A stretch of 64,000 nt of DNA, taken from contig OZ251224.1 in NCBI GenBank assembly GCA_965240325.2, forward strand, positions 868,001 to 932,000, written 5' to 3'. Positions 10,383 through 30,114 of this stretch are shown here, in pieces. Position numbers and translations under genes: made by a program. Each line of letters begins with the position of its first letter. Position 1 is the stretch's first letter. The stretch comes from Rebecca billardiae RCC1528. Lineage: Eukaryota > Protista > Haptophyta. The notes beneath the pieces are model-generated. The model saw only the letters and a list, made by a program, of their open reading frames with translations. It made no database searches and was not told where the DNA came from.

Positions 10383-13300
10383 ATGCTCTCGCTCCTCCTC
10401 GCGCTCGCCGTCGCGGCGGGCAAGGACAACCTCAACGGCCAGGCCGAGGTGACCGAGTACATCGTGAGCTTTGGCAAGGGCAAGCCCGGCGGCGGCTCGT
10501 CGACGGCCGTCGCCACCGCTCTGAGCGCGCTGCCCGCCGGCTCTGCGAGCGTCAAGCACGAGTTCTCGAACGTGATCGAGGGCTTCAGCGGCACGCTCAC
10601 CAAGGAGGCCAAGGCGATGCTCGAGAAGATGGGCGCGACGATCGAGGAGGACCTGCCCGTGTACGCCCTCGCCAACGACGACCAGGACGAGCGGCAGCAG
10701 GGCAAGGGCAAGTACAGCGTCGGCATCCTCGAGGCGCTGCCGTGGGGCCTCGACCGCATCGACCAGACCAACCTGCCGCTCGACGGCTCGTTCGAGACGC
10801 CCGGCCTGGGCGAGGACGCGCACGTCTTTGTGGTGGATACGGGTATCAACCTGGGCCACAACGAGTGGACTGGTCGCATCGGCGACGGCTACGACTTCAT
10901 CGACAACGACGACGACCCGACGGACTGCGGCGGTGGGTTGCGCTCGAGCTGCACGCGCATGCACGCTCGCGCCCGCACCGCGGCGGCACGCACTGACCAT
11001 CCCCGCCTCCCGCGTGCCCTACCCGCGCGCGAACGCAGGCCACGGCACGCACTGCGCGGGCACCGTGCTCGGCACGCACTACGGTGTGGCGAAGGGCGCG
11101 ACGCTGCACGGCGTGCGCGTGCTCGGCTGCTCCGGCTCCGGCTCGACCTCGGGAATCATCGCCGCGCTCGAGTGGGTGGCGGAGCGCGAGGAGTCCATCA
11201 AGATCGTGTCGATGTCGCTCGGCGGCGGCTTCTCCAGCACCTTCAACGACGCCGTCAACAACCTCGTCAACGCGGGCGTGACCACCGTCGTCGCGGCGGG
11301 CAACGACAACGACGACGCATGCACCACGAGCCCGGCGTCCGCGCCGCTGGCGATCACCGTCGGCTCGACGACGAGCAGCGACGCGCGCTCCGGCTTCTCG
11401 AACTACGGCAGCTGCGTGGACATCTACGCGCCAGGCAGCAGCATCCTCAGCGCGTGGATCGGCGGCCCCGACGCGACCAACACCATCTCGGGCACCTCTA
11501 TGGCTTGTCCGCACGTGGCCGGCGTCGTCGCGCAGTGGGCGAGTGCGCTCGGGGCCTCCGCGACGCCGGCGCAGCTGCTCAGCTTCATCCTCGCCGAAGC
11601 CGTTCCCGACATCGTCACGGGGGTGCCCGCGCCGGAGGAGCCAAAGCTGCTCCAGGCGTACACGATGGCGCCGCCAAGCCCGCCGCCCGCGCCGCCTTCG
11701 CCGCCGCCCTCGCCACCGCCGCCCTCGCTGCCACCCTCGCCGCCCTCGCCTCCGAGCCCCCCACCGCTGCCGCCCTCGCCGCCGAGCCCGCCGCCGAGCC
11801 CGGCGTGCATCAGCGGCCACATCCGCTGCGGCACGCCGCGTACTGGCACGACGGCCGGCGCTCCAAACAACTGGGGCAACCCGTCGGGCGAGGTCTTCTT
11901 CGGGATCGACGGCTGGGGCTCGGCGCTGCGCCTCGACACGTGCGGCTCGAGCTACGACACGTACCTGCGCGTGTACGACAAGTGCCCCGACGAGGGCGGC
12001 GTGCAGCTCGCGGCGAACGACGACGGCAGCTGCGGGTTCGCCTCGCTCATCACGCTCGACGTGCCGCTCGACAGCGGGTACGTGGTGATGGTCGAGGGCT
12101 ACTCGAGCAGCGAGGGCGCGTACACGCTCGCGATGACGGGCTGCGACAACCCGAGCCTGCCGCTGCCGCCGTCTCTGCCGCCGAACCCGCCGACGTCGCT
12201 TACGTCGCCGCCGGCCCCTCCGCCAAGCCCGCCGCCACCGTCGCCGCCCTCGCCACCGCCTGCTCCGCCGCGCCCGCCGTGCACCGTCGGCACGATCACG
12301 TGCGCAGCTCCCGCCACCGGCTCGACCGCCGGCGCGCCGAACAACTGGGGCAACCCGTCGGGCGAGCACCTGTACGCGATCAGCGGGCACGGCACGCTGC
12401 GCCTCGACACGTGCGGCTCGAGCTACGACACGTACCTGCGCGTGTACGACAAGTGCCCCGACGAGGGCGGCGTGCAGCTCGCGGCGAACGACGACGGCAG
12501 CTGCGGTCTCGCCTCGCTCATCACGCTCGACGTGCCGCTCGACAGCGGGTACGTGGTGATGGTCGAGGGCTACTCGAGCAGCGAGGGCGCGTACACGCTT
12601 GCGATGACGGGCTGCGAGGTGCCGAGCCCGTCGCCCTCGCCGGGCCCCCTGCCGACACCCCCGCCGACACCCCCGCCGAGCCCCTCGCCGACGCCCTCGC
12701 CGATGCCCTCGCCCAGCCCCCCGCCCAGCCCGCCACCGCCCTCCTCGCCTCCGCCACTTTCGCCCTCGCCGCCCCCCTCACCACCGCCGCCGCCGCCCGA
12801 GCCGTGCGCCGTTGGCCGGCTCACGTGCGCCACGCCCGCCATCGGCTCCACAATCGGCCTGCCCAGTGTCTGGGGCGCGCCGAGCGGCGACGCGCTGTAC
12901 CGGCTGTCGTTCGGCGAGGCCGGCGGCACGGCGAGGCTCACGGCCTGTGGCAGCGACTTTGACACGGTCCTGCGCGTGCTCGACGGCTGCCCGGGCGCGC
13001 CTCACGGCGCCACGGAGCTCGCGGTCAACGACGACAGCGGCGAGTGCGGCGACGCTTCCGCGCTCACGGTCGACGTGCCGCCCGGCGGCTCTGTGATTGT
13101 GCTGGTGGAGGGCTTCGTGACGAAGGAGGGGCAGTACAAGCTGACGGTGGAGGGCTGCCCCGATGAGGACGAGGGCAGGATCGCGCCGCCCTCGCCGCCG
13201 CCCTCGCCCTCGCCACCGCCCGCGCCGTGTGTCCCTGCGGGCGCGCTGCCGCTCAGCTGCGGCACGACTGTGCGCGGCGACACACGCGACGGCTCTGGGG

Positions 13301-14655
13301 ACGCCAACTTTGGCAACCCGGCGCGCGAGCACTACTACACGATCAGCGCGCCCACCGCGACGACCGTCACCCTCGACACGTGCGGCTCCGAGTACGACAC
13401 CTTCCTCCGCGTGTACGACGGCTGCCCGCGCGACGCGGACGCGCAGATCGGCAGCGACGACGACAGCGGCTGCGGCGTGATGGCGCGGCTCTCGCTCGAG
13501 CTCGAGGGCGGCGTGGAGTACCTGGTGCTGCTCGAGGGCTTCGGGGCGAACCAGGGGCCGTACTCGCTCGAGATGAGCTGCGACGGCGGCGGCGAGTCAT
13601 CCGTGCCCGACGATAACGGCGGCGGCGACGAGCTGCCGGGTGTCGAGCCCCCCACCGACGCGGCGCGCATCCACTGCTCACTCGGGCTCGAGGCTGACCT
13701 CGCAGACTGGGCTGACGGCGCGGCGGGTGCAGCAGACAAGCGCGCGGCGCTCGGCGCTTCGATCGCGCAGGTGGCCGAGGTCCCGACGTCGGACGTCCTC
13801 ATCACGAGCGTGGTCGGCGGGAGCGTCACTGTCCACTTCGAGGTGGTGCGCGCGGACGAGGACGAGCAGATCGACAAGGTGATCGAGAACTTGGAGACAC
13901 GCGCCGCCCAGCTCGCGGCGAGCGTCGAGGCGAGCACGGGCTCAAGCGTGACCTCCGGCGTGGTCGTGCAGGAGGTGGTCCACCCGCTCCAGCCGACGCC
14001 GACGCCGACGCCGGCCAGCGGTGACGAGGCGGTGGGCGTTGTTGTCGACGGTGTCAAGGCGAATGACGACGGGGCCGGTGCGGACGGCGGCGACGACGAC
14101 GACGACGACGACAACGACGACGACGACCTGGGTTCGCAGGCGCGCGTCGGCGGCGCGGCCGGAGCCGCCGACACGGCGACGGGCGGCGGCGTCGGCGGCT
14201 CGTCGCTCAGCCTCGCCGCGCTCATCGGCATTGTCACCGGCGCCGTCGGCGCGCTAGTGGTCGCGCTGTGCGCGTACGCCGGCTGGAAGCGCTGGAAGTA
14301 CGACTCGAAGCTGACCCACTCCGCCCGCGCCGTGTCCTACCAGGCCGCCGGAGACCAGGCGCTGCCGACGGCGGACGAGTCGGCTCCGAGCGCGGCGAGG
14401 CCTGCCGCTGAGTTCCAAGAGTTCCATGCCGTCGCGCTCAACGCGGCGCCCCAGCCGTCGACGAGCACAGCGGGGCTGTGGACGACGGTCGTGGCTACTG
14501 CTTCGTCCTGGTTCTCCCCAAGCTCGAGCCAGACGGCAGCACCGGCACGCGAGAGCGTGGCGGACGTCGACGAGCTTGGCCCTCCGCGTCGTGCGTCGCG
14601 CACGATGGCGGCGCGCCCGCCGGCCCCTGGCGCCGGCTCGGCAAACATGGCCTAA
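10383..14655 (+). CDS. Membrane-anchored subtilisin-like (S8, proteinase K type) protease, 4 Cys-containing repeat domains; exons 10383-10932 and 11039-14655
   Basis: Signal peptide MLSLLLALAVAAG, I9-like prodomain, PWGLDRID, catalytic motifs VVDTG, HGTH (joined across a GT-AG intron), AAGN and GTSMACPHVAG, Pro-rich linkers, and a TM segment LAALIGIVTGAVGALVVALCAYAGW followed by KRWK. Confidence 0.93.
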
Positions 14656-15190
14656 GGCGAGCATGCCCACGACTGCTGCACCTGCATGGTGCCACCGATC
14701 GGCACGCTGCTGCGCCGCTCGACCGCGCGCATGCGACGCGCTGCTTTGGGGCCTTTGTTTGACGACGTCGTCCTCGTGACGACGGCGTCCTCCTCGTCTC
14801 ACAACGACGACAACTTTATGTCGTCGCGTCAACTTCGCGGCAGCATCGCGGTCCCGGATGCGTTGGGGCTTGGGCGTATCCCGCCTGTCGCCAACCGGTA
14901 CGGCACGCACCCACTTCGTCTACTGTCGTGTGCGCCTCGTTATTATATACTGAGCTATAGTCAATGCTGATCGGTCGTCGTGCAGCACGTAGCCACGGTC
15001 TCTGCTACTGCCAATCTGACGATTAGTAGCGGCGGTGACGGGTGAGGTCTGGTGAGTGGTGACGGCGTCGCCGTCGGCAGTAGGCGTAGCCTATACGAAC
15101 TGCATTAGCTCGGCATAGTAGTTATAGCTATATAGCTAGCTATTATATAGCTTATAAATGTGTGTGAGAATATATATATATATATATATA

Positions 15191-15892: not shown

Positions 15893-18800
15893 TATATATA
15901 TATATATACATATACATATACATATATATATATATGTATATGATGCGCATGATGCGCATTGATTAATGCATAGCTAATAGATGCTGTACATGCATGACTG
16001 CTGACGATCATCGTCGTCTCGACGACGTCGATCGATCTGCTTCGAAAAATAAATAATCGAAAATGCTCGCGGCAAGGGCGTTCCCGGGATCCTGCCACAC
16101 GCTCCCGGGAAAGCAATGCCCCCCCCTGGGGGGGGCATTGCTACCGGACTGGCGCGGGCCGTAATCTTAAAATGTACCTGCTTGAAATAGAGGAAGCCTA
16201 TTTCAATGGGAACGCGGTTCGATTTGGCGCATGACCAATGCGGGGAACGCCCCTGATGGCGGGCCGTAGGTCCGCCCCTCGGTAGTGCCCGGGGAAAAGA
16301 TCAGAAAAAGAAAAGAATAAATAAAATCGCCTCGCAAAGAAAAGAAAATCGTCTTGCTCACTACCGGGCGCCCTGTAGCTCCCACTGGGGACGCTCGGCC
16401 GAAAAAGGGGTCGGCCATGGCGCGGAGCGCATGGGCGGCGCGCGCCAAATCCAACATCGTGAGAGGACTCCCGAGGGGGTTTTCGCCCGATTCGCGATTG
16501 CTGCCCTCGTCGTCTCGCGTGCAGGTCGAACGAGGGCCAAAGTCGACGCGTTTGGAGGTACGCTCGGCGCGTCGACACGATCGTGCGACCTGGGGCGGTC
16601 CTCGCCCGACTTGCACGTCGAGCGCTCGCACCAGCCATATCATCAAGCGCTGCGCACGATGGCCGCCTCGCGCGATGCACCGCCGCGCGTCGGGCTCGGT
16701 GCGGAAAGGCCCTCATCAGGGCGGGAAGCGCCATCGCGCGCGAGGCAAGATTTGGCGCGGCCTTCTGAACACGATCGCCGGAAATCCGCGCGCACCGGAC
16801 TCAGTCCTCGCTCGCGGTCCGGTCCCTCAGCCGACAAGCCCACGTCCGGCCTGCATGGCGTCGACGGTGACCAATGCGACGGAAGCGCAACGCCAACGGC
16901 GTACGACGCGCAGCGGACGCACCTCCCGGGTCTGTCGCCGTGGCAGCAACCGTGTCTTCGCGAGTTGGCGACCCTCGTCGCAGCGCGACACAGACAAGCC
17001 CGTGATGATGCCATCCGCAGAGAGATGAAACGTCGAGCATGCAAAATCGCCGCGCCATCCTCGTCCATGGCGCAGGCGCTGCGGGACGAGGCGGAAGTCG
17101 TCACGCCGGTGACGGATGCGCTGCGATTCGTGTGCCCGCGTGAGCAGCGCTTGCCCACTCTCGATCGCGAGTGGCACACGCTGTCGCTGTGCGCGCGCGC
17201 GCGCACAACCAACAGCTCCTCGTGCCGCCGAGCACGCGAGCGCCAGACCTGTCGAAGAGGCGAAGAGCGACGACCGCGTGAACGTCAACGCGCTCGTGCT
17301 CAGCGTGGCGGCCGTGTACGACGTCAACGCGACCTGCGCCGAGCCCATCATGCCTGGAGCGGACATCGGCAAGCATCCTCGCGACGACCGCTCTCGGCTG
17401 GCGGCAGGAGGACATGCACATGATCTACTCTGGCGGCTTCGTCGGCGGCGAGGCGCTCGATTACGCCATCGCGGTCGACATGCGGCACATACAGCGCCTA
17501 CCCGCGCTCGCGCGGAGAAACGGGCTACCCGCTCCGCCCCGCGTGCTGCACATTCCCTCGTGGGTGTGGGCCTCGCTGATGGAGTGATGCGCATACTACT
17601 AAGAGTACACGGACCGTGAGACGTGTGCACACGTCGGAGAGCCAACTTCACGTGTCACTGGTCCTTGCACTCGACTGTCCGTCACCCACGGCCACGAGCG
17701 AATGTGGAAAGCAGACGCGAACCCGCAAAGGATACATTGCGACAGCACTGGCACGGCCCGCCGACCCCCCCGCCCGTCAGGGCACAGTTTTAATAATAAT
17801 ATGCTGATGATCAGGGGCGCTTCCAGTTCCGCGGTTCCGCCCGGCTTCGCCAGGACTCGGTGAAGCCTACTACGACTGTGTCACTGTGAGGACACTCGCG
17901 TGCGAATCGCGATGCGACGAAATGGCGGGCCGTAGGTCCGCCCCTTGTTGGCGGGCCGTAGGTCCGCCCCTTGTAGTGCCCGGGGAAAAAAGATCATCAG
18001 AAAAAAGGTAAAATAATGGCGGGCCGTTAAAGAAAATCGCCTCGCAAAGAAATAACGAAAATCGCTTCCTCACTACCGGGCCGCCCTCGGCGCCTCGCAG
18101 CTCCCACTGGGGACGCTCGGCCGAAAAAGGGTTTCTGGATGGCGCGGAGCGCGTGCGCCAAATCCAACGCCGGCGCGGACATCGTGAGAGGACTCCCGAG
18201 GGGTTTTTTCGCCTGATTCGCGATTTCTGCCCTCGTCGTCTCGCGTGCAGGTCGAACGGGGGCCAAAGTCGACGCGTTTGGAGGTACGCTCGGCGCGTCG
18301 ACACGATCGTGCGACCTGGGGCGGTCCTCGCCCGACTTGCACGTCGAGCGCTCGCACGGGCCATAGCATCAAGCGCTGCGCTCGACAACCACCTCGCGCG
18401 ATCCACCGCCGCGCGTCGAGCTCGGTGCGGAAAGGCCCTCATCACGAGGTGTCTCGCGGGCGGGAAGCGCCTCGTGCGCTCGGCGTCCGACCTCGCGCAA
18501 CGCATGTCGGGCGGCGCAAACGACGACGAGGCCTCAGGCGATGGCGGTGACATCATGGTGCGCTTCCCCGCGCTCGTCTGACCACATCGTGGCGACGCGC
18601 AGGCGACCTACGGCGTGCGGCTGCGCACGCACCGTCACACAATCCTGATCATCGTCACGTCGTCGAGCGCCGCCATCTGCGCATCTCCACGGCCGACCAT
18701 TCGCTGGAAGCCTGGCAGGCTGGCACCAAGATCTATTCTTAGATCTGGTCCATCCTCCGGATGAAGATCGACCGACCAGGCGACCACTCCGACTCTGAAC

Positions 18801-18934
18801 TCCGGCCTGGCAAGAAAAGTTCCACCTTCAATCTCGCGGACTTGTCGGATCAAACGGACGTTCCCGACGCAAGCTGACGCAACGCAATCGCGCCAGCCGC
18901 CAACGGAACGACGATCGGCACGCCAACTCGCAGC

Positions 18935-21900
18935 ATGCTCTCGCTCCTCCTCGCGCTCGCCGTCGCGGCGGGCAAGGACAACCTCAACGGCCAGGCCGAG
19001 GTGACCGAGTACATCGTGAGCTTTGGCAAGGGCAAGCCCGGCGGCGGCTCGTCGACGGCCGTCGCCACCGCTCTGAGCGCGCTGCCCGCCGGCTCTGCGA
19101 GCGTCAAGCACGAGTTCTCGAACGTGATCGAGGGCTTCAGCGGCACGCTCACCAAGGAGGCCAAGGCGATGCTCGAGAAGATGGGCGCGACGATCGAGGA
19201 GGACCTGCCCGTGTACGCCCTCGCCAACGACGACCAGGACGAGCGGCAGCAGGGCAAGGGCAAGTACAGCGTCGGCATCCTCGAGGCGCTGCCGTGGGGC
19301 CTCGACCGCATCGACCAGACCAACCTGCCGCTCGACGGCTCGTTCGAGACGCCCGGCCTGGGCGAGGACGCGCACGTCTTTGTGGTGGATACGGGTATCA
19401 ACCTGGGCCACAACGAGTGGACTGGTCGCATCGGCGACGGCTACGACTTCATCGACAACGACGACGACCCGACGGACTGCGGCGGTGGGTTGCGCTCGAG
19501 CTGCACGCGCATGCACGCTCGCGCCCGCACCGCGGCGGCACGCACTGACCATCCCCGCCTCCCGCGTGCCCTACCCGCGCGCGAACGCAGGCCACGGCAC
19601 GCACTGCGCGGGCACCGTGCTCGGCACGCACTACGGTGTGGCGAAGGGCGCGACGCTGCACGGCGTGCGCGTGCTCGGCTGCTCCGGCTCCGGCTCGACC
19701 TCGGGAATCATCGCCGCGCTCGAGTGGGTGGCGGAGCGCGAGGAGTCCATCAAGATCGTGTCGATGTCGCTCGGCGGCGGCTTCTCCAGCACCTTCAACG
19801 ACGCCGTCAACAACCTCGTCAACGCGGGCGTGACCACCGTCGTCGCGGCGGGCAACGACAACGACGACGCATGCACCACGAGCCCGGCGTCCGCGCCGCT
19901 GGCGATCACCGTCGGCTCGACGACGAGCAGCGACGCGCGCTCCGGCTTCTCGAACTACGGCAGCTGCGTGGACATCTACGCGCCAGGCAGCAGCATCCTC
20001 AGCGCGTGGATCGGCGGCCCCGACGCGACCAACACCATCTCGGGCACCTCTATGGCTTGTCCGCACGTGGCCGGCGTCGTCGCGCAGTGGGCGAGTGCGC
20101 TCGGGGCCTCCGCGACGCCGGCGCAGCTGCTCAGCTTCATCCTCGCCGAAGCCGTTCCCGACATCGTCACGGGGGTGCCCGCGCCGGAGGAGCCAAAGCT
20201 GCTCCAGGCGTACACGATGGCGCCGCCAAGCCCGCCGCCCGCGCCGCCTTCGCCGCCGCCCTCGCCACCGCCGCCCTCGCTGCCACCCTCGCCGCCCTCG
20301 CCTCCGAGCCCCCCACCGCTGCCGCCCTCGCCGCCGAGCCCGCCGCCGAGCCCGGCGTGCATCAGCGGCCACATCCGCTGCGGCACGCCGCGTACTGGCA
20401 CGACGGCCGGCGCTCCAAACAACTGGGGCAACCCGTCGGGCGAGGTCTTCTTCGGGATCGACGGCTGGGGCTCGGCGCTGCGCCTCGACACGTGCGGCTC
20501 GAGCTACGACACGTACCTGCGCGTGTACGACAAGTGCCCCGACGAGGGCGGCGTGCAGCTCGCGGCGAACGACGACGGCAGCTGCGGTCTAGCCTCGCTC
20601 ATCACGCTCGACGTGCCGCTCGACAGCGGGTACGTGGTGATGGTCGAGGGCTACTCGAGCAGCGAGGGCGCGTACACGCTTGCGATGACGGGCTGCGAGG
20701 TGCCGAGCCCGTCGCCCTCGCCGGGCCCCCTGCCGACACCCCCGCCGACACCCCCGCCGAGCCCCTCGCCGACGCCCTCGCCGATGCCCTCGCCCAGCCC
20801 CCCGCCCAGCCCGCCACCGCCCTCCTCGCCTCCGCCACTTTCGCCCTCGCCGCCCCCCTCACCACCGCCGCCGCCGCCCGAGCCGTGCGCCGTTGGCCGG
20901 CTCACGTGCGCCACGCCCGCCATCGGCTCGACAATCGGCCTGCCCAGTGTCTGGGGCGCGCCGAGCGGCGACGCGCTGTACCGGCTGTCGTTCGGCGAGG
21001 CCGGCGGCACGGCGAGGCTCACTGCCTGTGGAAGCGACTTTGACACGGTCCTGCGCGTGCTCGACGGCTGCCCGGGCGCGCCTCACGGCGCCACGGAGCT
21101 CGCGGTCAACGACGACAGCGGCGAGTGCGGCGACGCTTCCGCGCTCACGGTCGACGTGCCGCCCGGCGGCTCTGTGATTGTGCTGGTGGAGGGCTTCGTG
21201 ACGAAGGAGGGGCAGTACAAGCTGACGGTGGAGGGCTGCCCCGATGAGGACGAGGGCAGGATCGCGCCGCCCTCGCCGCCGCCCTCGCCCTCGCCACCGC
21301 CCGCGCCGTGTGTCCCTGCGGGCGCGCTGCCGCTCAGCTGCAGCACGACTGTGCGCGGCGACACACGCGACGGCTCTGGGGACGCCAACTTTGGCAACCC
21401 GGCGCGCGAGCACTACTACACGATCAGCGCGCCCACCGCGACGACCGTCACCCTCGACACGTGCGGCTCCGAGTACGACACCTTCCTCCGCGTGTACGAC
21501 GGCTGCCCGCGCGACGCGGACGCGCAGATCGGCAGCGACGACGACAGCGGCTGCGGCGTGATGGCGCGGCTCTCGCTCGAGCTCGAGGGCGGCGTGGAGT
21601 ACCTGGTGCTGCTCGAGGGCTTCGGGGCGAACGAGGGGCCGTACTCGCTCGAGATGAGCTGCGACGGCGGCGGCGAGTCATCCGTGCCCGACGATAACGG
21701 CGGCGGCGACGAGCTGCCGGGTGTCGAGCCCCCCACCGACGCGGCGCGCATCCACTGCTCACTCGGGCTCGAGGCTGACCTCGCAGACTGGGCTGACGGC
21801 GCGGCGGGTGCAGCGGACAAGCGCGCGGCGCTCGGCGCTTCGATCGCGCAGGTGGCCCAGGTCCCGACGTCGGACGTCCTCATCACGAGCGTGGTCGGCG

Positions 21901-22736
21901 GGAGCGTCACTGTCCACTTCGAGGTGGTGCGCGCGGACGAGGACGAGCAGATCGACAAGGTGATCGAGAACTTGGAGACACGCGCCGCCCAGCTCGCGGC
22001 GAGCGTCGAGGCGAGCACGGGCTCAAGCGTGACCTCCGGCGTGGTCGTGCAGGAGGTGGTCCACCCGCTCCAGCCGACGCCGACGCCGACGCCGGCCAGC
22101 GGTGACGAGGCGGTGGGCGTTGTTGTCGACGGTGTCAAGACGAATGACGACGGGGCCGGTGCGGACGGCGGCGACGACGACGACGACGACGACAACGACG
22201 ACGACGACCTGGGTTCGCAGGCGCGCGTCGGCGGCGCGGCCGGAGCCGCCGACACGGCGACGGGCGGCGGCGTCGGCGGCTCGTCGCTCAGCCTCGCCGC
22301 GCTCATCGGCATTGTCACCGGCGCCGTCGGCGCGCTAGTGGTCGCGCTGTGCGCGTACGCCGGCTGGAAGCGCTGGAAGTACGACTCGAAGCTGACCCAC
22401 TCCGCCCGCGCCGTGTCCTACCAGGCCGCCGGAGACCAGGCGCTGCCGACGGCGGACGAGTCGGCTCCGAGCGCGGCGAGGCCTGCCGCTGAGTTCCAAG
22501 AGTTCCATGCCGTCGCGCTCAACGCAGCGCCCCAGCCGTCGACGAGCACAGCGGGGCTGTGGACGACGGTCGTGGCTACTGCTTCGTCCTGGTTCTCCCC
22601 AAGCTCGAGCCAGACGGCAGCACCGGCACGCGAGAGCGTGGCGGACGTCGACGAGCTTGGCCCTCCGCGTCGTGCGTCGCGCACGATGGCGGCGCGCCCG
22701 CCGGCCCCTGGCGCCGGCTCGGCAAACATGGCCTAA
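18935..22736 (+). CDS. Paralogous membrane-anchored subtilisin-like protease, 3 repeat domains; exons 18935-19484 and 19591-22736
   Basis: Same motifs as copy 1; 157 aa shorter (ORF 1118 vs 1275 aa). Confidence 0.93.
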
Positions 22737-23284
22737 GGCGAGCATGCCCACGACTGCTGCACCTGCATGGTGCCACCGATCGGCACGCTGCTGCGCCGCT
22801 CGACCGCGCGCATGCGACGCGCTGCTTTGGGGCCTTTGTTTGACGACGTCGTCCTCGTGACGACGGCGTCCTCCTCGTCTCACAACGACGACAACTTTAT
22901 GTCGTCGCGTCAACTTCGCGGCAGCATCGCGGTCCCGGATGCGTTGGGGCTTGGGCGTAATGCGTATCCCGCCTGTCGCCAACCGGTACGGCACGCACCC
23001 ACTTCGTCTACTGTCGTGTGCGCCTCGTTATTATACTGAGCTATATAGTCAATGCTGATCGGTCGTCGTGCAGCACGTAGCTACGGTCTCTGCTACTGAA
23101 TAGTGAATCTGCTGACGATCAGTAGTCTTAGCGGCGGTGACGGGTGAGGACTGAGGTCTGGTGAGTGGTGACGGCGTCGCCGTCGGCAGTAGGCGTAGCC
23201 TATACGAACTGCATGCTCGGCATAGTAGTTATAGCTATATAGCTAGCTATATCTATATATCTCTCTCTCTATATATATAGCTTA

Positions 23285-23361
<77 letters not shown>
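23285..23361. repeat. (TG)n(TA)n microsatellite; empty site for the 702-bp element
   Basis: Direct reading; flanks match 15110-15160 and 15950-16070. Confidence 0.9.
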
Positions 23362-23364
<3 letters not shown>

Positions 23365-25508
23365 TGATTCGCATTTATTAATGCATAGCTATAGATGCTG
23401 TACATGCATGACTGCTGACGATCATCGTCGTCTCGACGACGTCGATCGATCTGCTTAGAAAAATAAATAATCGAAACATGCTCGCTGAATGGCAAGCCGT
23501 TTAATATGCTGATGATCGGGGCGCTTCCGCGGTTCCGCCCGGCTTCGCCAGGACTCTGTGAAGCCTACGACTGTGTCACTGTGAGGACACTCGCGTGCGA
23601 ATCGCGATGCGACGAAATGGCGGGCCGTAGGTCCGCCCCTTGTAGTGCCCGGGGAAAAGATCAGAAAAAGTAATAGAATAAAGAAGTCGCCTCGCAATAC
23701 AGAAAAGAAAATCGCTTCGCTCACTACCGGGCCGCCCTCGCAGCTCCCACTGGGGACGCTCGGCCGAAAAAGGGTTCCTGGATGGCGCGGAGCGCGTGGG
23801 CGCCGCGCGCCAAATCCAACGCCGGCGCGGACATCATGAGAGGACTCCCGAGGGGTTTTTACGCCTGATTCGCGATTGCTGCTCTCGTCGTCTCGCGTGC
23901 AGGTCGAACGGGGGCCAAAGTCGACGCGTTTGGAGGTACGCTCGGCGCGTCGACACGATCGTGCGACCTGGGGCGGTCCTCGCCCGACTTGCACGTCGAG
24001 CGCTCGCACGGGCCATAGTAGCAAGCGCTGCGCACGACAACCACCTCGCGCGATCCACCGCCGCGCGTCGGGCTCGGTGCGGAAAGGCCCTCATCACGAG
24101 GTGTCTCGCGGGCGGGAAGCGCCATCGCACGCGACGCAAGATTTGGCGCGGCCTTCGGTGAACTCGATCGCCGGAATCCGCGCACCGGACTCAGTCCTCG
24201 CTCGCGGTCCGGTCCCTCACAGCCGGAGGCCGCCAGGCCGGAGCCCACATCCGGCCTGCATGGCGTCGACGGTGACCAATGCGACGGAAGCGCAGCGCCA
24301 ACGGCGTACGACGCGCAGCGGACGCACCTCCCGGGTCTGTCGCCGTGGCAGCAACCGTGTCTTCGCGAGTTGGCGACCCTCGCCGCAGCGCGACACAGAC
24401 AAGCCCGTGATGCCATCCGCAGAGATGAAACGTCGAGCATGCAACATCGCCGCGCCATCCTCGTCCATGGCGCAGGCGCTGCGGGACGAGGCGGACGTCG
24501 TCACGCCGCTGACGGATGCGCTGCGATTCGTGTGCCTGCGAGAGCAGCTCGTGCCCACTCTCGATCGCGAGTGGCACACGCTGTCGCTGTGCGCGCGCGC
24601 GCGCACAACCAACAGCTCCTCGTGCCGCCAAACACGCGGGCGCCAGACCTGTCGAAGAGGCGAAGAGCGACGACCGCGTGAACGTCAACGCGCTCGTGCT
24701 CAGCGTGGCGGCCGTGTACGATGCCAGCGCGACCTGCGCCGAGCCTATTATGCCCGGAGCGGACATCGGCAAGCGTCCTCGCGACGACCGCTATCGGCTG
24801 GCGGTAGGAGGACATGCACACGATTTACTCTGGCGGCTTCGTCGGCGGCGAGGCGCTCGATTACGCCATCGCGGTCGAGATGCGGCACATACAGCGCGTA
24901 CCTGCGTTCGCGCGGAGCATCGGGCTACCCGCCCCGCCCCGCGTGCTGCACATTCCCTCGTGGGTGTGGGCCTCGCTGATGATGCGCACGCCAGACGTGT
25001 ACACGTGTGATGTGAGTGAGTGGGAGAACTTCACAGGTGTCACTGGTCCGAAGCCTGTCCGTCACCCACGGCCACGAGCGAATGCTGTGGAAAGACGCGA
25101 ACCCGCAGATGACGAAACATTGCGATCGACAGCACTGGCACGGCCAGCCGAACCCCCCGCCCGCCAGGGCACAGTTTTCGTATTAGCGCATTGGCGCCGT
25201 GCGCATGTGGCAATTGCCGCACGTGGCATGACCGTCACTGAGTGATGTCTGATGACCAACCATTATTGTGTCAATGGACCATTGTCCATTCCATTGCTGA
25301 TGACCGCGCGCCAATAATTGCCAACGACTATTACTGTATAGCCTTTCACAACCCTCGGGCGGGCCGCCGAAAACAGATGATGGTGTTGCCCTGCCATCGT
25401 CATAGTGATGATGACGATCATGACGAATCGGGAATCGCGGGCCCGCTGCTCAGCCCAATGACGCGTGATGTCGATGGCGAGGAGCATGATTGACTCTGTC
25501 TGATGCCG

Positions 25509-27299
25509 TCACCGCCACATCTGCATGGGGAATGCAGGCACCATCACGTGCGAGTACCACGGGCCAGCGAGAAACGGGGCAGGGCCGAGTCCGGCTGCGT
25601 GCGATTCGGATGGCGGTGGTGCAGAAGCAGGTGGGCCATGAGCGAAAGCTGGCCCAAGCGGCACGCCGGTGCCCACGCTCCCCGCGCCCAGCGGGTGACA
25701 TGGCACATCGGAGTCGTGGTCTTGCGCGGGCGGGGCGCTTGGCACGCCAGCCACGACAATCGCACCGAGCGGCGGCCTCGAGCTCGGCGCTGGCTCGGCA
25801 CTTGGGTGCTTACCGGCCGTGAAGTGCTGCTGCGACGGCGGCGACTCGTGGCGCGCAAGCTGCGGGCCGAGGGCGTCTGCGCCTGGCACCCAGTGCTGCT
25901 GCGCAAGCGCCAGCGCTGGCTCAGCAGCAGCACACGCGGCAGCGGGCGGCGGCGGCGGTTGGGGCGCCTGCCGCTCAGTTGGAGCGGGGATTGCGATGCC
26001 GGCCGAGCGGCGGCGGCGCTTGGTCGCGCGCGCGCCGTCGGCGGCCAAGCCATCTGCGCCCTCGCCGCCGCCTCCCTCGAACGGCGGCGGCGGGAGCGGC
26101 GTCGTCGCCTTCGGGCCACCATCGGCAGCGCTGGCGGCGTGCTCGGCCGCCCGCGCCTGGTACGCCACAGCTGCCTCGAGCGCGTTGTCGAAGGTGCCGA
26201 TGGGCACGAGCCGGCCGTCGATGCGGATCTTTGCGACGAACTTCTTCCCGTGCCGGAAGACGCCCTTGAAGCCGCTCGTGAACACCGTCGAGCGCTCGAG
26301 AGGCCCGATGTCCGTCACGGCATTGGCGGCGGCGCTCGCCGCTGCGAGCGGGTGCCCAGGCGCGGACGCGGCCGCGCTGCTCACGCCTGCGTGTGCTGCG
26401 CTGGCGGCGGCGGCGGCGGCGGTATCGAAAGCGGCCGCCGCGGCGGCCGCCGCCGCGTCCACGCCGACCCCATGCCCCGCGAGCCGGCGCACGATGATCG
26501 CGTGGTACTGCGGGTCGTTCTCGAAGGCGATCACGCGGCGGCGCATCTTGGCAGCCGCGACGCACTCCGAGCCCGAGCCGCCAAACGGGACGAGCACGCA
26601 GTCGGCCTCGTGCGAGTGCACGCCGACGATGCGCTCGCACAGCTTGAGAGGCTTCATCGACGGGTGCGCGCCGTACTTGCGCTCCACGCTCCGCGAGTTC
26701 TCGCGCGGGATCTCCACCCAGTTGCGCGGCGGCCGTCCCTTGTCCAGCGACTCGTCCGTCACGCGCCCGACGCCCTTTGCGAGCGCCGTCGCGCGCTCCT
26801 CCGCGGAGTAGGGCTCGGCGGCGGCGTGCGCGTTGAAGGTGTGTGCGACAGACCCCGCTGCGCCGGGCACGACGAACCACTCCACGTGCTCCATGCGCAC
26901 CGAGTACTGCTGCATGCCCACGAAGCGTGAGTCCCCCCCTTGCGTGTAGCACCATGAGATGTGCTGCTTGAAGTCGAAGCCGAACTCGTCGGCGGCGATG
27001 ATCTTGAGCCGTGAGATCCATAGCTTCGCCGGGCTCCCGTAGATGAAGAGCTGCCCACCCGGGCGCAGGAGCCGGCGCGCCTGAGCGAGCCACGTGCGAC
27101 TCCAGTTGAGGTAGTCGGGCACAGAGTCCCACCGGGAGCCCTGCACGCTGATATCGTACGGCGGGTCGGCGATGATGAGGTCGACGCTCGCATCTGGGAG
27201 CACGCGCATCCCTGCGACGCAATCGCCCAGCCGCACCTCGACCACCGTGGGCGCGGGCGCCGTGCCGACGGCGGCGGCCGACTGCGCGCCGTGCGGCAT
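25509..27299 (-). CDS. N6-adenine/N4-cytosine DNA methyltransferase (beta-class motif order) fused to an AP2 DNA-binding domain
   Basis: GDCVAGMRVLPDASVDLIIADPPY (motif IV), then HPSMKP..VLVPFGGSGS..RRVIAFE (motifs X-I-II), then FKGVFRHGKKFVAKIRIDGRLVPIGTFDNALEAAVAY (AP2). First ATG is at 27299. Confidence 0.88.
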   Translation of the reverse strand: MPHGAQSAAAVGTAPAPTVVEVRLGDCVAGMRVLPDASVDLIIADPPYDISVQGSRWDSVPDYLNWSRTWLAQARRLLRPGGQLFIYGSPAKLWISRLKIIAADEFGFDFKQHISWCYTQGGDSRFVGMQQYSVRMEHVEWFVVPGAAGSVAHTFNAHAAAEPYSAEERATALAKGVGRVTDESLDKGRPPRNWVEIPRENSRSVERKYGAHPSMKPLKLCERIVGVHSHEADCVLVPFGGSGSECVAAAKMRRRVIAFENDPQYHAIIVRRLAGHGVGVDAAAAAAAAAFDTAAAAAASAAHAGVSSAAASAPGHPLAAASAAANAVTDIGPLERSTVFTSGFKGVFRHGKKFVAKIRIDGRLVPIGTFDNALEAAVAYQARAAEHAASAADGGPKATTPLPPPPFEGGGGEGADGLAADGARATKRRRRSAGIAIPAPTERQAPQPPPPPAAACAAAEPALALAQQHWVPGADALGPQLARHESPPSQQHFTAGKHPSAEPAPSSRPPLGAIVVAGVPSAPPAQDHDSDVPCHPLGAGSVGTGVPLGPAFAHGPPASAPPPSESHAAGLGPAPFLAGPWYSHVMVPAFPMQMWR

Positions 27300-27646
27300 A
27301 TTTTGACGATTGAACGCGAAAGCGAGGTGCGCGCCGTGCAAGAGCTCGTCCGAACGGAACGGCTGCCCAACGGACGTTCATATTTTCATCGCGCGCATCA
27401 TTTTTTTTCGATGACCTCCTTCGTCGTCACCCGCGCTTCACTGCAGTGTCAGTCGTCGTCGACAGGATCAGAGACGACTCGGCGCCTGTGACACATGCGC
27501 ACGTATACGTATGCGCGGCGGTCACGGGTGACCACCATGACCATACGCGGTGCGGGGCAGCCTGGGCTGCTGGGGAGGCAGCAGCCAGGCTGAGGTGCTT
27601 GTGGTCCGATCGATCCCCCGTCCAACGTCGCCCTCGTCTCTCACGC

Positions 27647-30114
27647 TCACTGCTGCTTCGCGCCCTTCACGTCGGACTGCTCGAACTCGAAGCGCACCAC
27701 CCCGCTCGGACGTGGGTCCGGCTCAAGCCCTGCCGCCGTCCCCGGCTCCTGCAGGTGCGCCATCCGCGGCGTATTCGCCCACAGCGCGCACAGCGCTGCC
27801 AGCCAGCAGCAGCCGATCAGCGCGCCCAGCGCCGTCGCGCAGTCGGCCACGGTGCCGTCGCTGAACGACAAGTCGCCCAGCACGCGCTCGCCGGTCATGC
27901 CGCGCGCCGCCGCGCCGCGCCGCGCGCGCGGCGGCCCCTCGGCGCCGTCCGACTCGAAGCGCAGCCCGACGAACTCGTTCACACACATGCCCTCGAACAG
28001 CCAGCGGATGAGCGACACGTCCGGCGCCCAGCGGAGCAGGAGCGGCACCGACTCTCTGTTGATCGAGTTGCCTGCACGGGCGCAGCGGCCGTGGTCGTGG
28101 ATGGGGCGGGCGCAGGGGTGGCGGCAAGGCCAGCGTGTTGGCGCGCAGTGCGCACACCGTGCGCACGCGTGCCGCACGACAGGCCGGCGCACCCGCCAGG
28201 GCACAGGCGGTGCACGCGTGGCGCGCCCGCCCCACTGGCCGCCCGGCCGCGCGCGCGCGCAGCCCTGCGCAGCGCGTGCGCCGCCCGCACCGTTGAAGAT
28301 CACCATCAGCACCACCACCGGCGGCATCAGCGCGAGCGCCGACTCGGTCGAGCGCGCGATGCAGCCGATCACGAGCCCGATCGCGGAGCTCGCGAGCCCG
28401 CCAAGTGCGACCAGCCCTGCGCAGCGCCGCGGGTCCGCAGTGCCGCGCGCGAGGCCCCTCACTCGCACGCAGCTTAGGCCGCGCGCCGGGCAGGCGCCGG
28501 GCAGGCGCGCGGCGCGCGCCGTGGCGCGCGACGGGGTCGCGGGCGAATCGCGCGCACCGAGGAAGGCCGTGAGGTGCGCGCGCGACGGCTGCAGCCCGGC
28601 GAGCGGGTAGAGCACCGCGCCGAACAGCGCGGACAGGCACACGGACAGCGGCACGTCCGTGAGCAGCTTGGACACAAACTGATCGATCAGAGCGAGCGCG
28701 CGCGCGCGCGCGCACGACAGGCGCGCGCGCCAGCGGAGGGACGGTGCGCGCGCCGCGCGCGCGGCTCAGGGGCGGGCGCGGCGGGCGCGGCGCGCGGGGG
28801 CGGGCGGCGCGCGGCGCGGGGCGCGCGCACGTAGGGGCCCACGGAGTACAGCCGCTTCGCGCGCTCCTCGTCGACCAGCGCCTTCTCCTTGGGGAACGTG
28901 CGGATGGTGCCCGCGATGCCCACGTTGGCGCCGCCGATCGCCACCAGTGAGAGCAGGCCGAGCCGGTCCTGCACGCCGCGCGCGGAGAGGTCGAGCGAGT
29001 AGAGCGCGCCGTAGATGAGGCCCATCGTGAGCTGCTGCGTGACCTTGATGCGCAGCGCTGCGCGGTTGCGCGCGAGCTGCCGCCACGCGCGCGCGAGCAG
29101 CAGGCCCAGCTGCGCGCCGAGGGGCGCTCGTGTGTGCGCTCCCGCCCAGCTGGCTGTGCTCAGCGGTGCGCTGAACGGCGCCGACTGCTGCTGCTTGGCG
29201 GGGCGCGGGGTGCCCGCCGCCGCGCGCTCGCGGCCCGCGCTCACGAGGCCCCGCAGCCTCTCGCGCGACGCCTGCTCGCTCTCGTAGTCGATCGAGACCA
29301 GGTCGAGCGCATGCTCGCTCAGCGGCACCGCACCCGGGCAGGGCCAGCCGGCCGCGGCCAGGTGCTCGGCGAGCTGAGCACGCTCGCCGGCGTAGACGGG
29401 TCGGCCGTCGGCGAGGAGCAGCAGGTCGTCCAGCTGCTGCAGTAGGGCCGCCGATGGCTGGTGGATCGTGAGCAGCACCGTGTGCCCCGCGTCGGCGAGC
29501 GCGCGCAGCCGGCTGAGCACACTCGCCGCTTGGAACGAATCCAGACCGGTCGTCGGCTCGTCGAGCACGATCAGCGGGGGGCTGGCGACGAGCTCGCATG
29601 CGATCGAGAGGCGCTTGCGCTCGCCGCCGGAGATGCCCCGCGTAGAGCTCTGCGCAGGATCGCCCACGAGCGTGTCCGCCGCCTTGGTGAGCCCGAGCGA
29701 TGCGAGCAGGCTGTGCACGCGCGCGTGCACATGCGCACTCGAGCCACTCGTGCGGAGCCGCGCGTGGAAGGTGAGGGTCTCGCGCGTGGTCATGCCGGAG
29801 AAGAACGCGTCCTCCTGCTTGACATAGGCCGCAGGCATCGACGATGGGTCGACGACGCGCGCGCCATTCACGAGCAGTACGCCCTCTAGGGTGAGGCCCT
29901 GGCGCCTCGGGACGTGCCCGACCACTGAGTTGAGGCACAGCGTCTTGCCGGCGCCAGAGGGGCCCATCAGCGCAGTGATGCGCCCCTGGCGAGCACGGCC
30001 GTACACACGGTCGAGGAGCACCCGTGTACCCTTGCCCTTGGCGAGCGTGCACGTGATGTCGTGCCACTCGAGGTTGACGGCGGCCATTGTTGTCGTGCTC
30101 ATCCGCTCCGCCAT
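27647..30114 (-). CDS. ABCG (white-family) half transporter; introns 28830-28679, 28557-28417, 28290-28072
   Basis: Walker A GPSGAGKT, signature ISGGERKR, Walker B IVLDEPTTGLD, TIHQP, and a C-terminal ABC2 membrane domain. Spliced junction reads YSVGPY|FVSKLL. Confidence 0.92.

What the first reader, a model, noticed from the sequence alone, without database searches (positions are those of the whole stretch)
25509..27299. Bacterial-type amino-DNA methyltransferase fused to an AP2 DNA-binding domain in a eukaryote
Seen: an intronless ORF with intact DPPY and a PFGGSG SAM-binding loop in beta-class order, an Ala-rich linker, an AP2 domain (~26275-26150) and a basic TKRRRRS stretch resembling a nuclear localisation signal. 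No restriction enzyme, RT or recombinase is adjacent. Known: beta-class DPPY enzymes make 6mA (sometimes 4mC) in prokaryotic restriction-modification systems, whereas the usual eukaryotic 6mA writers are MT-A70 family. Inference: a horizontally acquired methyltransferase retargeted by a transcription-factor domain, i.e. a candidate sequence-directed epigenetic writer, analogous to the chromodomain-fused N4C methyltransferase of bdelloid rotifers. This is the best candidate in the window for an undescribed system.
Basis: partly seen in the sequence, partly recalled or inferred. Interest (0 to 1): 0.8.

Follow-up and report, generated by a model that had tools for sequence, protein, structure and literature searches.

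The report
Haptophyte DNA adenine methyltransferase–AP2 fusion
This alga carries an intact gene that joins a bacterial-type DNA adenine methyltransferase to a plant-like AP2 DNA-binding domain; the same fusion is conserved across haptophyte algae and I found no study of it, so it is a good candidate for an enzyme that writes a DNA mark at chosen sites.

Summary
Window 25509-27299 (-) is one uninterrupted 596-aa ORF. It has a beta-class N6_N4 DNA methyltransferase domain (Pfam E 8e-32; nearest structures M.RsrI, M.BceJIV and CcrM, all N6-adenine enzymes). DPPY precedes PFGGSGSE. An Ala-rich linker, an AP2 domain and a KRRRR patch follow.

The AP2 call is weak for this protein alone (Pfam E 0.002, below the family cut-off) but firm for the family:
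- A profile of 18 homologues hits only AP2/ERF structures.
- AlphaFold gives three strands plus a helix at pLDDT above 90, with AP2 structures as top matches (Z 6-7.8).
- An exhaustive profile search lands on genuine multi-AP2 proteins of Emiliania huxleyi.

The gene is not private to this genome. About 20 of 31 homologues share the MTase-AP2 core, in Diacronema lutheri, Pavlovales CCMP2436, E. huxleyi (with introns), Chrysochromulina parva and metagenomes. Some add zf-CW, chromo, ZZ or Tudor modules.

The nearest non-haptophyte relatives are stand-alone enzymes on dense, ORFan-rich, virus-like contigs. Named bacterial relatives are only 35-37% identical.

Best reading: a nuclear, AP2-directed DNA 6mA writer. 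Activity, target and expression are untested, and no RNA run was listed. No paper I could search describes the fusion.

The parts
25509..27299 (-). Complete single-exon coding sequence, 596 aa plus stop (protein P0001)
   Evidence: ORF list and upstream in-frame stop. The identical protein was called on an independent Logan contig that is 100% identical and colinear over 2780 bp.
26490..27185 (-). Beta-class N6_N4 amino-DNA methyltransferase domain (residues 39-270)
   Evidence: Pfam PF01555 E 8e-32. PDB sequence match to M.RsrI, E 1e-28. Foldseek on the AlphaFold model: M.RsrI 1.9e-19, then M.BceJIV, CcrM and MboIIA.
27156..27167 (-). Catalytic motif IV, DPPY (residues 45-48)
   Evidence: Position. 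Invariant or nearly invariant across 13, 31 and 55 aligned homologues.
26649..26666 (-). Conserved HPSMKP motif (residues 212-217), aligned with HPTQKP of M.RsrI
   Evidence: HMMER alignment to 1eg2. H212, P213, K216 and P217 are invariant in 55 sequences.
26565..26588 (-). SAM-binding motif I, PFGGSGSE (residues 238-245), downstream of DPPY, which gives beta-class order
   Evidence: Position. P238, G241 and G243 are invariant in 55 sequences.
26358..26465 (-). Ala-rich linker (residues 279-314), poorly conserved
   Evidence: Position. Identity 0.23 among orthologues. pLDDT 49-70 in the model.
26139..26300 (-). AP2 domain (residues 334-387): three beta strands followed by one helix
   Evidence: Pfam AP2 E 0.002 for this protein, with 12 of 18 homologues matching, best 4.7e-6. 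Family profile against PDB: only AP2/ERF chains, 3e-5 to 5e-4. AlphaFold pLDDT 92-96. Foldseek top 8 are all AP2, and VIA Z is 7.8/7.6/6.7/6.0. An exhaustive profile search hits multi-AP2 proteins that pass Pfam's cut-off.
26004..26024 (-). Basic patch TKRRRRS (residues 426-432), a possible nuclear localisation signal. It lies a similar distance past AP2 as the AT-hook-like KKRGRP motif of orthologues
   Evidence: KKRGRP-type motifs in P0002-P0007, 30-150 residues after AP2. The window protein lacks the GRP core. The NLS role is inference.
25512..26003 (-). Pro/Ala-rich, poorly conserved C-terminal tail with a short conserved VVxGVPxAxP motif (25728-25757)
   Evidence: Composition and motif. 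Identity 0.15. No Pfam domain.

Best explanation
The gene encodes a nuclear DNA N6-adenine methyltransferase of bacterial (beta-class, M.RsrI-like) ancestry. It has been fused, since before the haptophyte classes diverged, to an AP2 DNA-binding domain taken from the haptophytes' own large AP2 transcription-factor family.

Proposed mechanism:
- The AP2 domain, helped by a basic or AT-hook patch, docks the enzyme on particular DNA sequences or regions.
- The catalytic domain then methylates adenines in its own short target motif nearby.
- In prymnesiophyte relatives, added histone-mark readers (zf-CW, chromo, Tudor, ZZ) further tie this writing to chromatin state.

Shown here: the domains, their order, their conservation, the fold, and ordinary chromosomal residence.

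Inferred: adenine rather than cytosine specificity, DNA binding by AP2, nuclear location, and any biological role.
For: - Catalytic domain: it is intact and constrained. Pfam E 8e-32. DPPY, HPxxKP and FGGSG are invariant or nearly so in up to 55 homologues.
- Nearest solved structures are all N6-adenine enzymes: RsrI, BceJIV and CcrM.
- Motif IV has D, not S. This is the established N6A versus N4C rule, also used in PMC4738411.
- AP2 identity. The best hits of the family profile are Pfam-valid multi-AP2 proteins, including E. huxleyi EMIHUDRAFT_195991 and EMIHUDRAFT_101766.
- Fusion conserved: about 20 of 31 homologues keep AP2. These include D. lutheri, Pavlovales CCMP2436, E. huxleyi and the C. 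parva cluster.
- Conservation islands: MTase 0.79 and AP2 0.59, against linker 0.23 and tail 0.15.
- Chromatin link: P0301 is MTase-AP2-zfCW-Chromo-ZZ. P0027 and C. parva are MTase-AP2-Tudor_5.
- Host gene, not an insert. The D. lutheri orthologue sits in a 3 Mb contig among housekeeping genes. The E. huxleyi orthologue is multi-exon. The window gene has the host's GC3 (0.85) and ordinary neighbours.
- The N-terminus has only about 24 residues before the catalytic core, which leaves no room for a bipartite plastid leader (sequence).
Against: - No enzymatic, methylome or expression data exist for this gene, and no RNA run was listed.
- In G. huxleyi, PacBio HiFi reads showed only a few 6mA signals without any pattern, although its three N6-adenine MTases are expressed and up in haploids (bioRxiv 10.1101/2024.05.26.595999). 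Whether one of those three is this family is unknown.
- By the HMMER alignments to AtERF1, the two ERF tryptophans are replaced: G at the W154 position and P or a variable residue at W172. Glu160 is an invariant Lys. The binding mode and specificity therefore cannot be copied from ERF.
- The window protein scores below Pfam's AP2 cut-off on its own.
- The window protein lacks the GRP core of the AT-hook seen in orthologues.
Confidence: 0.6

Rival explanations
1. The AP2 domain is a general DNA anchor rather than a targeting device. On this view it raises affinity or processivity without choosing loci, as the C-terminal DNA-binding domain of CcrM does, and the enzyme methylates its short motif genome-wide.
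For: - CcrM and M.BceJIV are among the closest structures. That CcrM needs a C-terminal DNA-binding domain is prior knowledge.
- The ERF-type specificity residues are not conserved, and the position after SG[YF] varies freely among orthologues.
Against: - The AP2 module is closest to haptophyte multi-AP2 proteins that look like transcription factors.
- Eleven AP2 positions are invariant in 18 homologues.
- Histone-reader accretion in relatives points to locus-selective action.
Confidence: 0.2
2. The enzyme's main role is in conflict with large DNA viruses. It would methylate host DNA at the same motif as a related viral methyltransferase, protecting the host genome from virus-encoded nucleases. 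Alternatively, it is a captured viral gene with a residual function of that kind.
For: - The closest non-haptophyte relatives (48-55% identity) form one clade (support 100/99) of stand-alone 250-300 aa enzymes.
- These sit on contigs that are 80-88% coding and ORFan-rich, and that carry SET, U-box, HNH_3/NUMOD4 and a second N6_N4 MTase.
- In the ML tree this clade nests among the haptophyte sequences.
Against: - The viral nature of those contigs is not shown. They have no close match in IMG/VR, and no hallmark gene was seen in the 20 kb windows.
- The nesting is unsupported. Haptophyte monophyly is not rejected (p-AU 0.45).
- A protective methylase has no obvious need for AP2, chromo, zf-CW or Tudor modules.
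Confidence: 0.1
3. The enzyme makes N4-methylcytosine rather than 6mA, as the rotifer N4CMT does.
For: PF01555 enzymes have switched between N6A and N4C repeatedly (PMC8885841). N4CMT and M.PvuII are recognisable structural relatives.
Against: - Motif IV is DPPY, invariant in the family. N4C enzymes typically have S at that position (rule as used in PMC4738411).
- All top structural and sequence matches are N6A enzymes. N4CMT is only 22-24% identical.
Confidence: 0.07
4. The gene is a contaminant, a recent viral or bacterial insert, or a pseudogene, and the AP2 resemblance is chance.
For: The gene is intronless and the enzyme is of bacterial type. The window protein's own Pfam AP2 score is below the cut-off. 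No RNA evidence is available.
Against: - Orthologues with the same fusion occur in several haptophyte genomes in ordinary chromosomal settings, and one has introns.
- The ORF is intact and all catalytic motifs are kept.
- Host-like GC3, eukaryotic neighbours and no flanking repeats.
- AP2 is supported by five independent lines.
Confidence: 0.03

Closest known systems
N4CMT of bdelloid rotifers (Rodriguez et al. 2022, PMC8885841; PDB 8s9m, 8s9n, 8s9o)
   Same: Both are bacterial-type, permuted PF01555 amino-methyltransferases living as nuclear eukaryotic genes, with a eukaryotic chromatin or DNA-targeting domain fused C-terminally. Some relatives of the present protein also carry a chromodomain.
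   Different: - The acquisition is independent: only 22-24% identity, and N4CMT ranks below all N6A enzymes.
- Motif IV is DPPY here, which predicts 6mA rather than 4mC.
- The partner domain is a DNA-binding AP2, not (or not only) a histone reader.
- The host group is haptophyte algae.
- That paper states its enzyme has no eukaryotic homologues.
M.RsrI, M.BceJIV and CcrM (beta-class bacterial N6-adenine DNA methyltransferases)
   Same: Same fold, same motif order, and shared DPPY, HPxxKP and FxGxG motifs. They are the best sequence and structure matches.
   Different: - Identity is only about 30%.
- There is no partner restriction enzyme.
- A 300-aa eukaryotic extension carries AP2.
- The sampled named bacterial relatives sit across a very long branch in the tree.
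Eukaryotic N6A-methyltransferase clades catalogued by Iyer, Zhang and Aravind 2016 (PMC4738411), notably the haptophyte-restricted Group-1 clade 6 and the chlorophyte-type Dam fused to PWWP/zf-CW
   Same: The theme is the same: prokaryote- or phage-derived adenine methyltransferases that repeatedly accreted chromatin and DNA-binding domains. A haptophyte-specific clade is recorded there.
   Different: [quoted passage not shown]
- Its main text does not mention AP2 at all (0 occurrences).
- No FHA was found in 31 members here.
- Only one E. huxleyi gene was recovered here.
AP2/ERF and haptophyte multi-AP2 proteins (for example E. huxleyi EMIHUDRAFT_195991 and EMIHUDRAFT_101766)
   Same: The same three-strand-plus-helix domain. 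The family profile scores these proteins best, and several also carry zf-CW.
   Different: Those proteins have 3-14 AP2 copies and no enzyme domain. Here a single AP2 follows a methyltransferase. The plant ERF DNA-contact tryptophans are not kept.

Membership tests
Beta-class N6_N4 amino-DNA methyltransferases (Pfam PF01555) | Match to the family model above its curated cut-off | tested here: met
   111.4 bits against a cut-off of 26.7, E 8e-32, covering model positions 1-220 of 221.
Beta-class N6_N4 amino-DNA methyltransferases (Pfam PF01555) | Permuted order: catalytic (D/S)PP(Y/F) motif N-terminal to the FxGxG SAM loop | tested here: met
   DPPY at residues 45-48 and PFGGSGSE at 238-245.
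Beta-class N6_N4 amino-DNA methyltransferases (Pfam PF01555) | Fold shared with solved members | tested here: met
   Model pLDDT 86.7. Foldseek: M.RsrI E 1.9e-19, target TM 0.78; M.BceJIV target TM 0.82.
Beta-class N6_N4 amino-DNA methyltransferases (Pfam PF01555) | SAM-dependent methylation of DNA adenine N6 (or cytosine N4) | not testable with these tools
   Only predicted, from D in motif IV and from the nearest characterised enzymes.
AP2/ERF DNA-binding domain (Pfam PF00847) | Match to the family model above its curated cut-off | tested here: not met
   The window protein scores 18.6-19 bits against a cut-off of 33.3 (E 0.002). Twelve of 18 homologues match, with best E 4.7e-6.
AP2/ERF DNA-binding domain (Pfam PF00847) | Homology to accepted AP2 domains by profile search | tested here: met
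   Family profile against PDB: the five best hits are all AP2/ERF chains; four (WRI1, two AtERF1 chains, ERF096) score E 3e-5 to 5e-4 and TEM1 scores 0.11. Against 1.84 billion proteins, the top hits are multi-AP2 proteins that pass Pfam's cut-off at 34-113 bits.
AP2/ERF DNA-binding domain (Pfam PF00847) | Three-stranded antiparallel sheet packed on one C-terminal helix | tested here: met
   Strands 347-350, 353-360 and 363-370, and helix 373-393, at pLDDT 92-96. The domain-only model gives VIA Z 7.8, 7.6, 6.7 and 6.0 to AP2 structures, two T. gondii mitoribosome chains at 5.8 and 5.3, then CedA at 4.9 and dsRBD chains at 4.3 or below.
AP2/ERF DNA-binding domain (Pfam PF00847) | ERF-type DNA-contact residues (Arg and Trp on the sheet) | tested here: not met
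   By the HMMER alignments to AtERF1, both Trp positions are replaced and Glu160 is an invariant Lys. Several basic residues remain. Residue numbering of the AtERF1 contacts is from prior knowledge.
AP2/ERF DNA-binding domain (Pfam PF00847) | Sequence-specific DNA binding | not testable with these tools
   Needs DAP-seq, PBM or EMSA.
Bdelloid N4CMT family | Orthology to the rotifer enzyme and N4C specificity | tested here: not met
   22-24% identity, ranked below all N6A enzymes. Motif IV here has D. It works like N4CMT in design but is not a member.
Haptophyte Group-1 clade 6 N6A-MTases of Iyer et al. 2016 | N-terminal FHA-fold domain, expansion in Emiliania, and ParB-Tls phage ancestry | tested here: inconclusive
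   No FHA was found by Pfam in 31 members. One E. huxleyi gene was recovered. The best phage matches are only about 29% identical. The paper's accession lists are not held, so identity with that clade cannot be excluded.
Restriction-modification system methylase | Cognate restriction endonuclease gene adjacent | tested here: not met
   The neighbours are an ABCG transporter and a subtilase. The D. lutheri orthologue lies among housekeeping genes.

The most novel reading that the evidence does not exclude
Haptophytes have a lineage-wide, self-contained 'transcription-factor-guided' DNA 6mA system. A single polypeptide reads DNA sequence through AP2 and, in prymnesiophytes, also reads histone marks through zf-CW, chromo, Tudor and ZZ. 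It then writes adenine methylation at those loci, possibly in a life-cycle-phase-specific way. Its catalytic module has been exchanged with large DNA viruses of these algae. This would be a eukaryotic 6mA pathway independent of MT-A70 enzymes.
Probability: 0.3. Interest if true: 0.85.

Novelty: new variant of a known kind. Interest (0 to 1): 0.62.

Why it matters
Whether eukaryotic genomes use 6mA as a true, targeted epigenetic mark is contested, and the accepted writers are MT-A70 enzymes. Here a different, bacterial-type adenine methyltransferase is hard-wired to a transcription-factor DNA-binding domain. In relatives it is also wired to histone-mark readers. It is conserved across a phylum that includes coccolithophores and bloom-forming algae.

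That gives a directly testable case of sequence-directed DNA methylation. The enzyme is small enough to express, the AP2 domain can be profiled by DAP-seq, and long-read data already exist for D. lutheri and G. huxleyi.

It is also a second, independent example after the rotifer N4CMT of a prokaryotic amino-methyltransferase domesticated into chromatin. The link to virus-like contigs bears on gene flow between algae and their viruses. As a natural fusion of a DNA-binding domain to a methyltransferase, it resembles engineered epigenome editors.

Tried and rejected
- RNA evidence: the look-up of sequencing runs listed no run. The only other holder of the gene is a 2780-bp Logan contig identical and colinear with the window, which cannot tell RNA from DNA.
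- Synteny with D. lutheri: tblastx found only the gene itself conserved, not its neighbours.
- Mobile-element context: no long terminal or inverted repeats around the gene, only low-complexity matches.
- Phage origin: the best phage matches are about 29% identical cyanophage methylases. Rejected as a close source.
- IMG/VR scan with the stand-alone clade: only distant hits at or below 38% on fragments, so the virus-like label for that clade stays unproven. An ESM Atlas look-up of one of its ORFans was uninformative.
- AP2 downstream of the stand-alone genes: none within 10 kb in L001, L002 and L009, nor in L006-L008.
- Word search with the AP2 region alone: blank apart from one orthologue. The exhaustive profile search was then used.
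- RAMA domain: 5 of 18 AP2 segments give weak RAMA matches (E about 0.02). Set aside because AP2 is far better supported.
- Supplement of Iyer et al. 2016: not held, so I could not check whether the E. huxleyi orthologue is in their lists.
- Literature: six searches found no paper describing an MTase-AP2 fusion or 6mA mapping in haptophytes beyond one sentence in the G. huxleyi preprint.
Full report
**1. What is in the sequence**

The minus strand of window 25509-27341 holds a 610-codon ORF counted from a TTG. The first ATG is at 27299 and an in-frame stop lies 14 codons above it. The likely protein is therefore 596 aa (P0001).

An identical protein is called on an independent 2780-bp Logan contig that matches the window base for base with no gaps.

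Pfam finds one strong domain, N6_N4_Mtase, at 111 bits (E 8e-32), covering the whole model. NCBIfam's best models are adenine-specific methyltransferases: PRK11524 and CcrM. The best solved relative is M.RsrI (E 1e-28), followed by M.BceJIV, CcrM and MboIIA.

The motifs lie in beta-class order:
- DPPY, residues 45-48
- HPSMKP, residues 212-217
- PFGGSGSE, residues 238-245

After the catalytic domain come four further parts:
- an Ala-rich linker, residues 279-314
- the AP2-like segment, residues 342-387
- TKRRRRS, residues 426-432
- a Pro/Ala-rich tail

**2. Is the AP2 domain real?**

On its own, the segment scores only 18.6 bits against Pfam AP2 (E 0.002, cut-off 33.3). It scores E 0.16 against AtERF1. 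Five further lines settle the question.

- (a) The segment is conserved in about 20 of 31 homologues, with 11 invariant positions.
- (b) Twelve of 18 homologous segments match Pfam AP2, with best E 4.7e-6.
- (c) A profile of the 18 segments searched against all PDB sequences returns AP2/ERF chains as its five best hits. WRI1, AtERF1 and ERF096 score E 3e-5 to 5e-4, and TEM1 scores 0.11.
- (d) AlphaFold2 predicts three strands and a helix at pLDDT 92-96, both in the 395-residue model and in a domain-only model. Foldseek's top eight PDB matches to the domain-only model are all AP2 domains. VIA-align gives Z 7.8, 7.6, 6.7 and 6.0 for TEM1, WRI1 and AtERF1. Two T. gondii mitoribosome chains follow at 5.8 and 5.3, CedA scores 4.9, and dsRBD chains score 4.3 or less.
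- (e) An exhaustive HMMER search of 1.84 billion representatives finds 20,589 proteins at E up to 0.001. The best are proteins with 3-14 copies of the module. These pass Pfam AP2's own cut-off at up to 113 bits. They include two E. huxleyi proteins that UniProt names AP2/ERF domain-containing, and some also carry zf-CW.

The module is therefore a genuine AP2 domain of the type that is abundant in haptophytes. This points to recruitment from the host's own transcription-factor stock.

One caveat applies. By the HMMER alignments to AtERF1, the two tryptophans that contact DNA in plant ERFs are replaced, and Glu160 is an invariant lysine. Which residues contact DNA in AtERF1 is my prior knowledge. 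DNA binding, and especially its specificity, is inferred.

**3. A conserved family, not a one-off**

The full-length search returned 31 proteins. Those that carry a source name are all from haptophytes:
- Pavlovales sp. CCMP2436
- Diacronema lutheri KFE25_008850
- Chrysochromulina tobinii
- E. huxleyi EMIHUDRAFT_205290
- a cluster that contains a Chrysochromulina parva gene model

Among eight Pavlovales-type orthologues, mean pairwise identity by region is:

| Region | Identity |
|---|---|
| Methyltransferase | 0.79 |
| AP2 | 0.59 |
| Linker | 0.23 |
| Tail | 0.15 |

This pattern of two constrained domains joined by free spacers is what a functional fusion predicts.

The D. lutheri orthologue is a single-exon gene in a 3-Mb contig. 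It lies between genes for an acid phosphatase and a SET-like protein, with phytochelatin synthase, allantoicase, Skp1 and citrate synthase nearby. The E. huxleyi orthologue is broken into at least five coding pieces in different frames, so it has introns. Several metagenomic gene calls stop right after the SGY of AP2, as expected where an intron lies inside the domain.

In the window, the gene sits between an ABCG half-transporter and a subtilase. No flanking repeats were found. Its GC3 of 0.85 fits a 67% GC genome. Being intronless is ordinary here, since 45% of D. lutheri genes are single-exon (PMC8379373).

**4. Accretion of chromatin modules**

Pavlovales-type orthologues carry an AT-hook-like KKRGRP motif after AP2. 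The window protein has KRRRR instead.

Prymnesiophyte relatives are longer:
- P0301 (1115 aa): MTase(190-415), AP2(460-519), zf-CW(590-631), Chromo(644-682), ZZ(1068-1100)
- P0030: an N-terminally truncated copy of the same design
- P0027 and C. parva: MTase, AP2, Tudor_5 (the Tudor_5 match is E 1.7e-6, just below its cut-off)

These are readers of histone methylation (domain functions are prior knowledge). Their presence argues that the family works on chromatin.

**5. Origin of the catalytic domain**

The domain-only search shows three tiers:
- haptophyte proteins at 60-77% identity
- a large set of stand-alone 250-300 aa enzymes at 48-55% identity
- named bacterial enzymes (Idiomarina, Ralstonia) at 35-37% identity

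Three loci that carry the stand-alone enzymes share these features:
- 80-88% coding
- the codon-position GC pattern of real genes
- 56-69% GC
- almost no Pfam hits, apart from SET, U-box, HNH_3/NUMOD4, MUG113 and further DNA methylases

One of the three is labelled an Opitutaceae MAG. This looks like large DNA viruses or virus-like elements, but it is not proven. IMG/VR holds no close relative.

In an IQ-TREE analysis the stand-alone set is one clade (support 100/99) and the bacteria lie across a very long branch. The stand-alone clade nests among haptophyte sequences without support. Forcing the haptophyte rows into one clade costs only 1.7 log-likelihood units (p-AU 0.45). For this tree I left out P0141 and P0094 because of their long branches.

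The conclusion is a single ancient bacterial-type acquisition shared by haptophytes and this virus-like clade. The direction of transfer between the two is unresolved. No AP2 lies near the stand-alone genes.

**6. Mechanism and rivals**

The most likely model (about 0.6) is a nuclear N6-adenine DNA methyltransferase that is brought to particular sequences by AP2 plus a basic or AT-hook patch. In some lineages it would also be brought to particular chromatin states.

Adenine specificity rests on DPPY and on the nearest enzymes. Nuclear location rests on the basic patch and on the absence of any N-terminal leader. Both are inferences.

The rivals are:
- AP2 as a non-specific DNA anchor, as in CcrM's C-terminal domain (0.2)
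- a role in virus-host conflict, suggested by the virus-like sister clade (0.1)
- N4-cytosine specificity (0.07)
- artefact or insert (0.03)

The main counter-evidence is indirect. A G. huxleyi preprint reports that its three N6-adenine methyltransferase genes are up-regulated in haploid cells. It also reports that HiFi reads showed only a few, patternless 6mA signals (10.1101/2024.05.26.595999). If 6mA is written only at a few AP2-specified loci or in one life stage, such a result would be expected. It equally fits inactivity.

**7. Comparison with what is known**

In design this is the closest parallel I know to the rotifer N4CMT (PMC8885841). It is not a member of that family: identity is 22-24%, motif IV has D, and the acquisition was separate. 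That paper states that its enzyme has no eukaryotic homologues.

Iyer, Zhang and Aravind (PMC4738411) catalogued many eukaryotic adenine methyltransferase clades with chromatin-domain fusions. These include a haptophyte-restricted clade described as FHA-fused and derived from phage ParB-Tls loci. The main text of that paper never mentions AP2. No FHA was detected in this family. Whether the two overlap could not be checked, because the supplement is not held.

Six literature searches found no description of a methyltransferase-AP2 fusion.

**8. Verdict**

It is a new variant of a known kind: a domesticated prokaryotic-type amino-methyltransferase with a eukaryotic targeting domain. Public databases already hold the orthologues under generic names, so the novelty lies in recognising the architecture and its conservation, not in the sequence. 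Function is entirely untested. Interest 0.62.

Other agents' notes on this genome call it a haptophyte alga. This agrees with the homologue taxonomy found here.

Noticed in passing
L001:10001-10843, L002:10001-10804, L009:10001-10819 and 13053-13889: Stand-alone relatives of the methyltransferase (48-55% identity) sit on contigs of up to 152 kb with 56-69% GC. The contigs are 80-88% coding and almost all ORFans, with SET, U-box, HNH_3/NUMOD4, MUG113 and extra DNA methylases. They look like GC-rich giant viruses or virus-like elements absent from IMG/VR. One is binned as an Opitutaceae MAG, probably wrongly.
   Followed up: partly
window 9523-14700 and 18075-22800: A recent tandem segmental duplication. 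Blocks of 155-300 nt are 100% identical at offsets of about 8552 and 8078-8081 nt, and one copy has an extra repeat unit of about 471 nt. The duplicated region includes the subtilase gene (Peptidase_S8, 19380-22736 +).
   Followed up: partly
window 27647-30114 (-): An ABCG-type half transporter (ABC_tran plus ABC2_membrane) lies immediately upstream on the same strand. It is split over at least two ORFs, so it probably has an intron or a frame change. Its end lies about 350 nt from the methyltransferase start codon.
   Followed up: no
window 23244-23369: A compound (TC)n/(TG)n/(TA)n microsatellite forms a perfect TA palindrome in an otherwise 67% GC region, about 2.1 kb beyond the 3' end of the gene.
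   Followed up: no
P0301 (1115 aa), P0030, P0027 and the C. parva cluster: Prymnesiophyte relatives extend the MTase-AP2 core with zf-CW, Chromo and ZZ, or with a Tudor_5-like module. This puts writer, DNA reader and histone reader in one chain.
   Followed up: partly
AP2 segments of 5 of 18 homologues (alignment A3): Weak matches (E about 0.02) to the RAMA domain, which Iyer et al. proposed as a 6mA-DNA reader. Probably noise next to the AP2 signal, but worth a profile-profile check.
   Followed up: no
E. huxleyi EMIHUDRAFT_195991 and EMIHUDRAFT_101766 (P0165, P0167) and metagenomic kin: Haptophytes hold a very large family of proteins with 3-14 tandem AP2 domains, some with zf-CW. The AP2 profile built here finds 20,589 representatives at E up to 0.001.
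   Followed up: partly
P0036 and P0146 (MMETSP transcripts, 282-286 aa): Transcriptome ORFs of a close relative end inside the linker, before AP2. They may be truncated contigs, retained introns, or a true short isoform without AP2. P0036 also has a damaged FGGSG loop.
   Followed up: no
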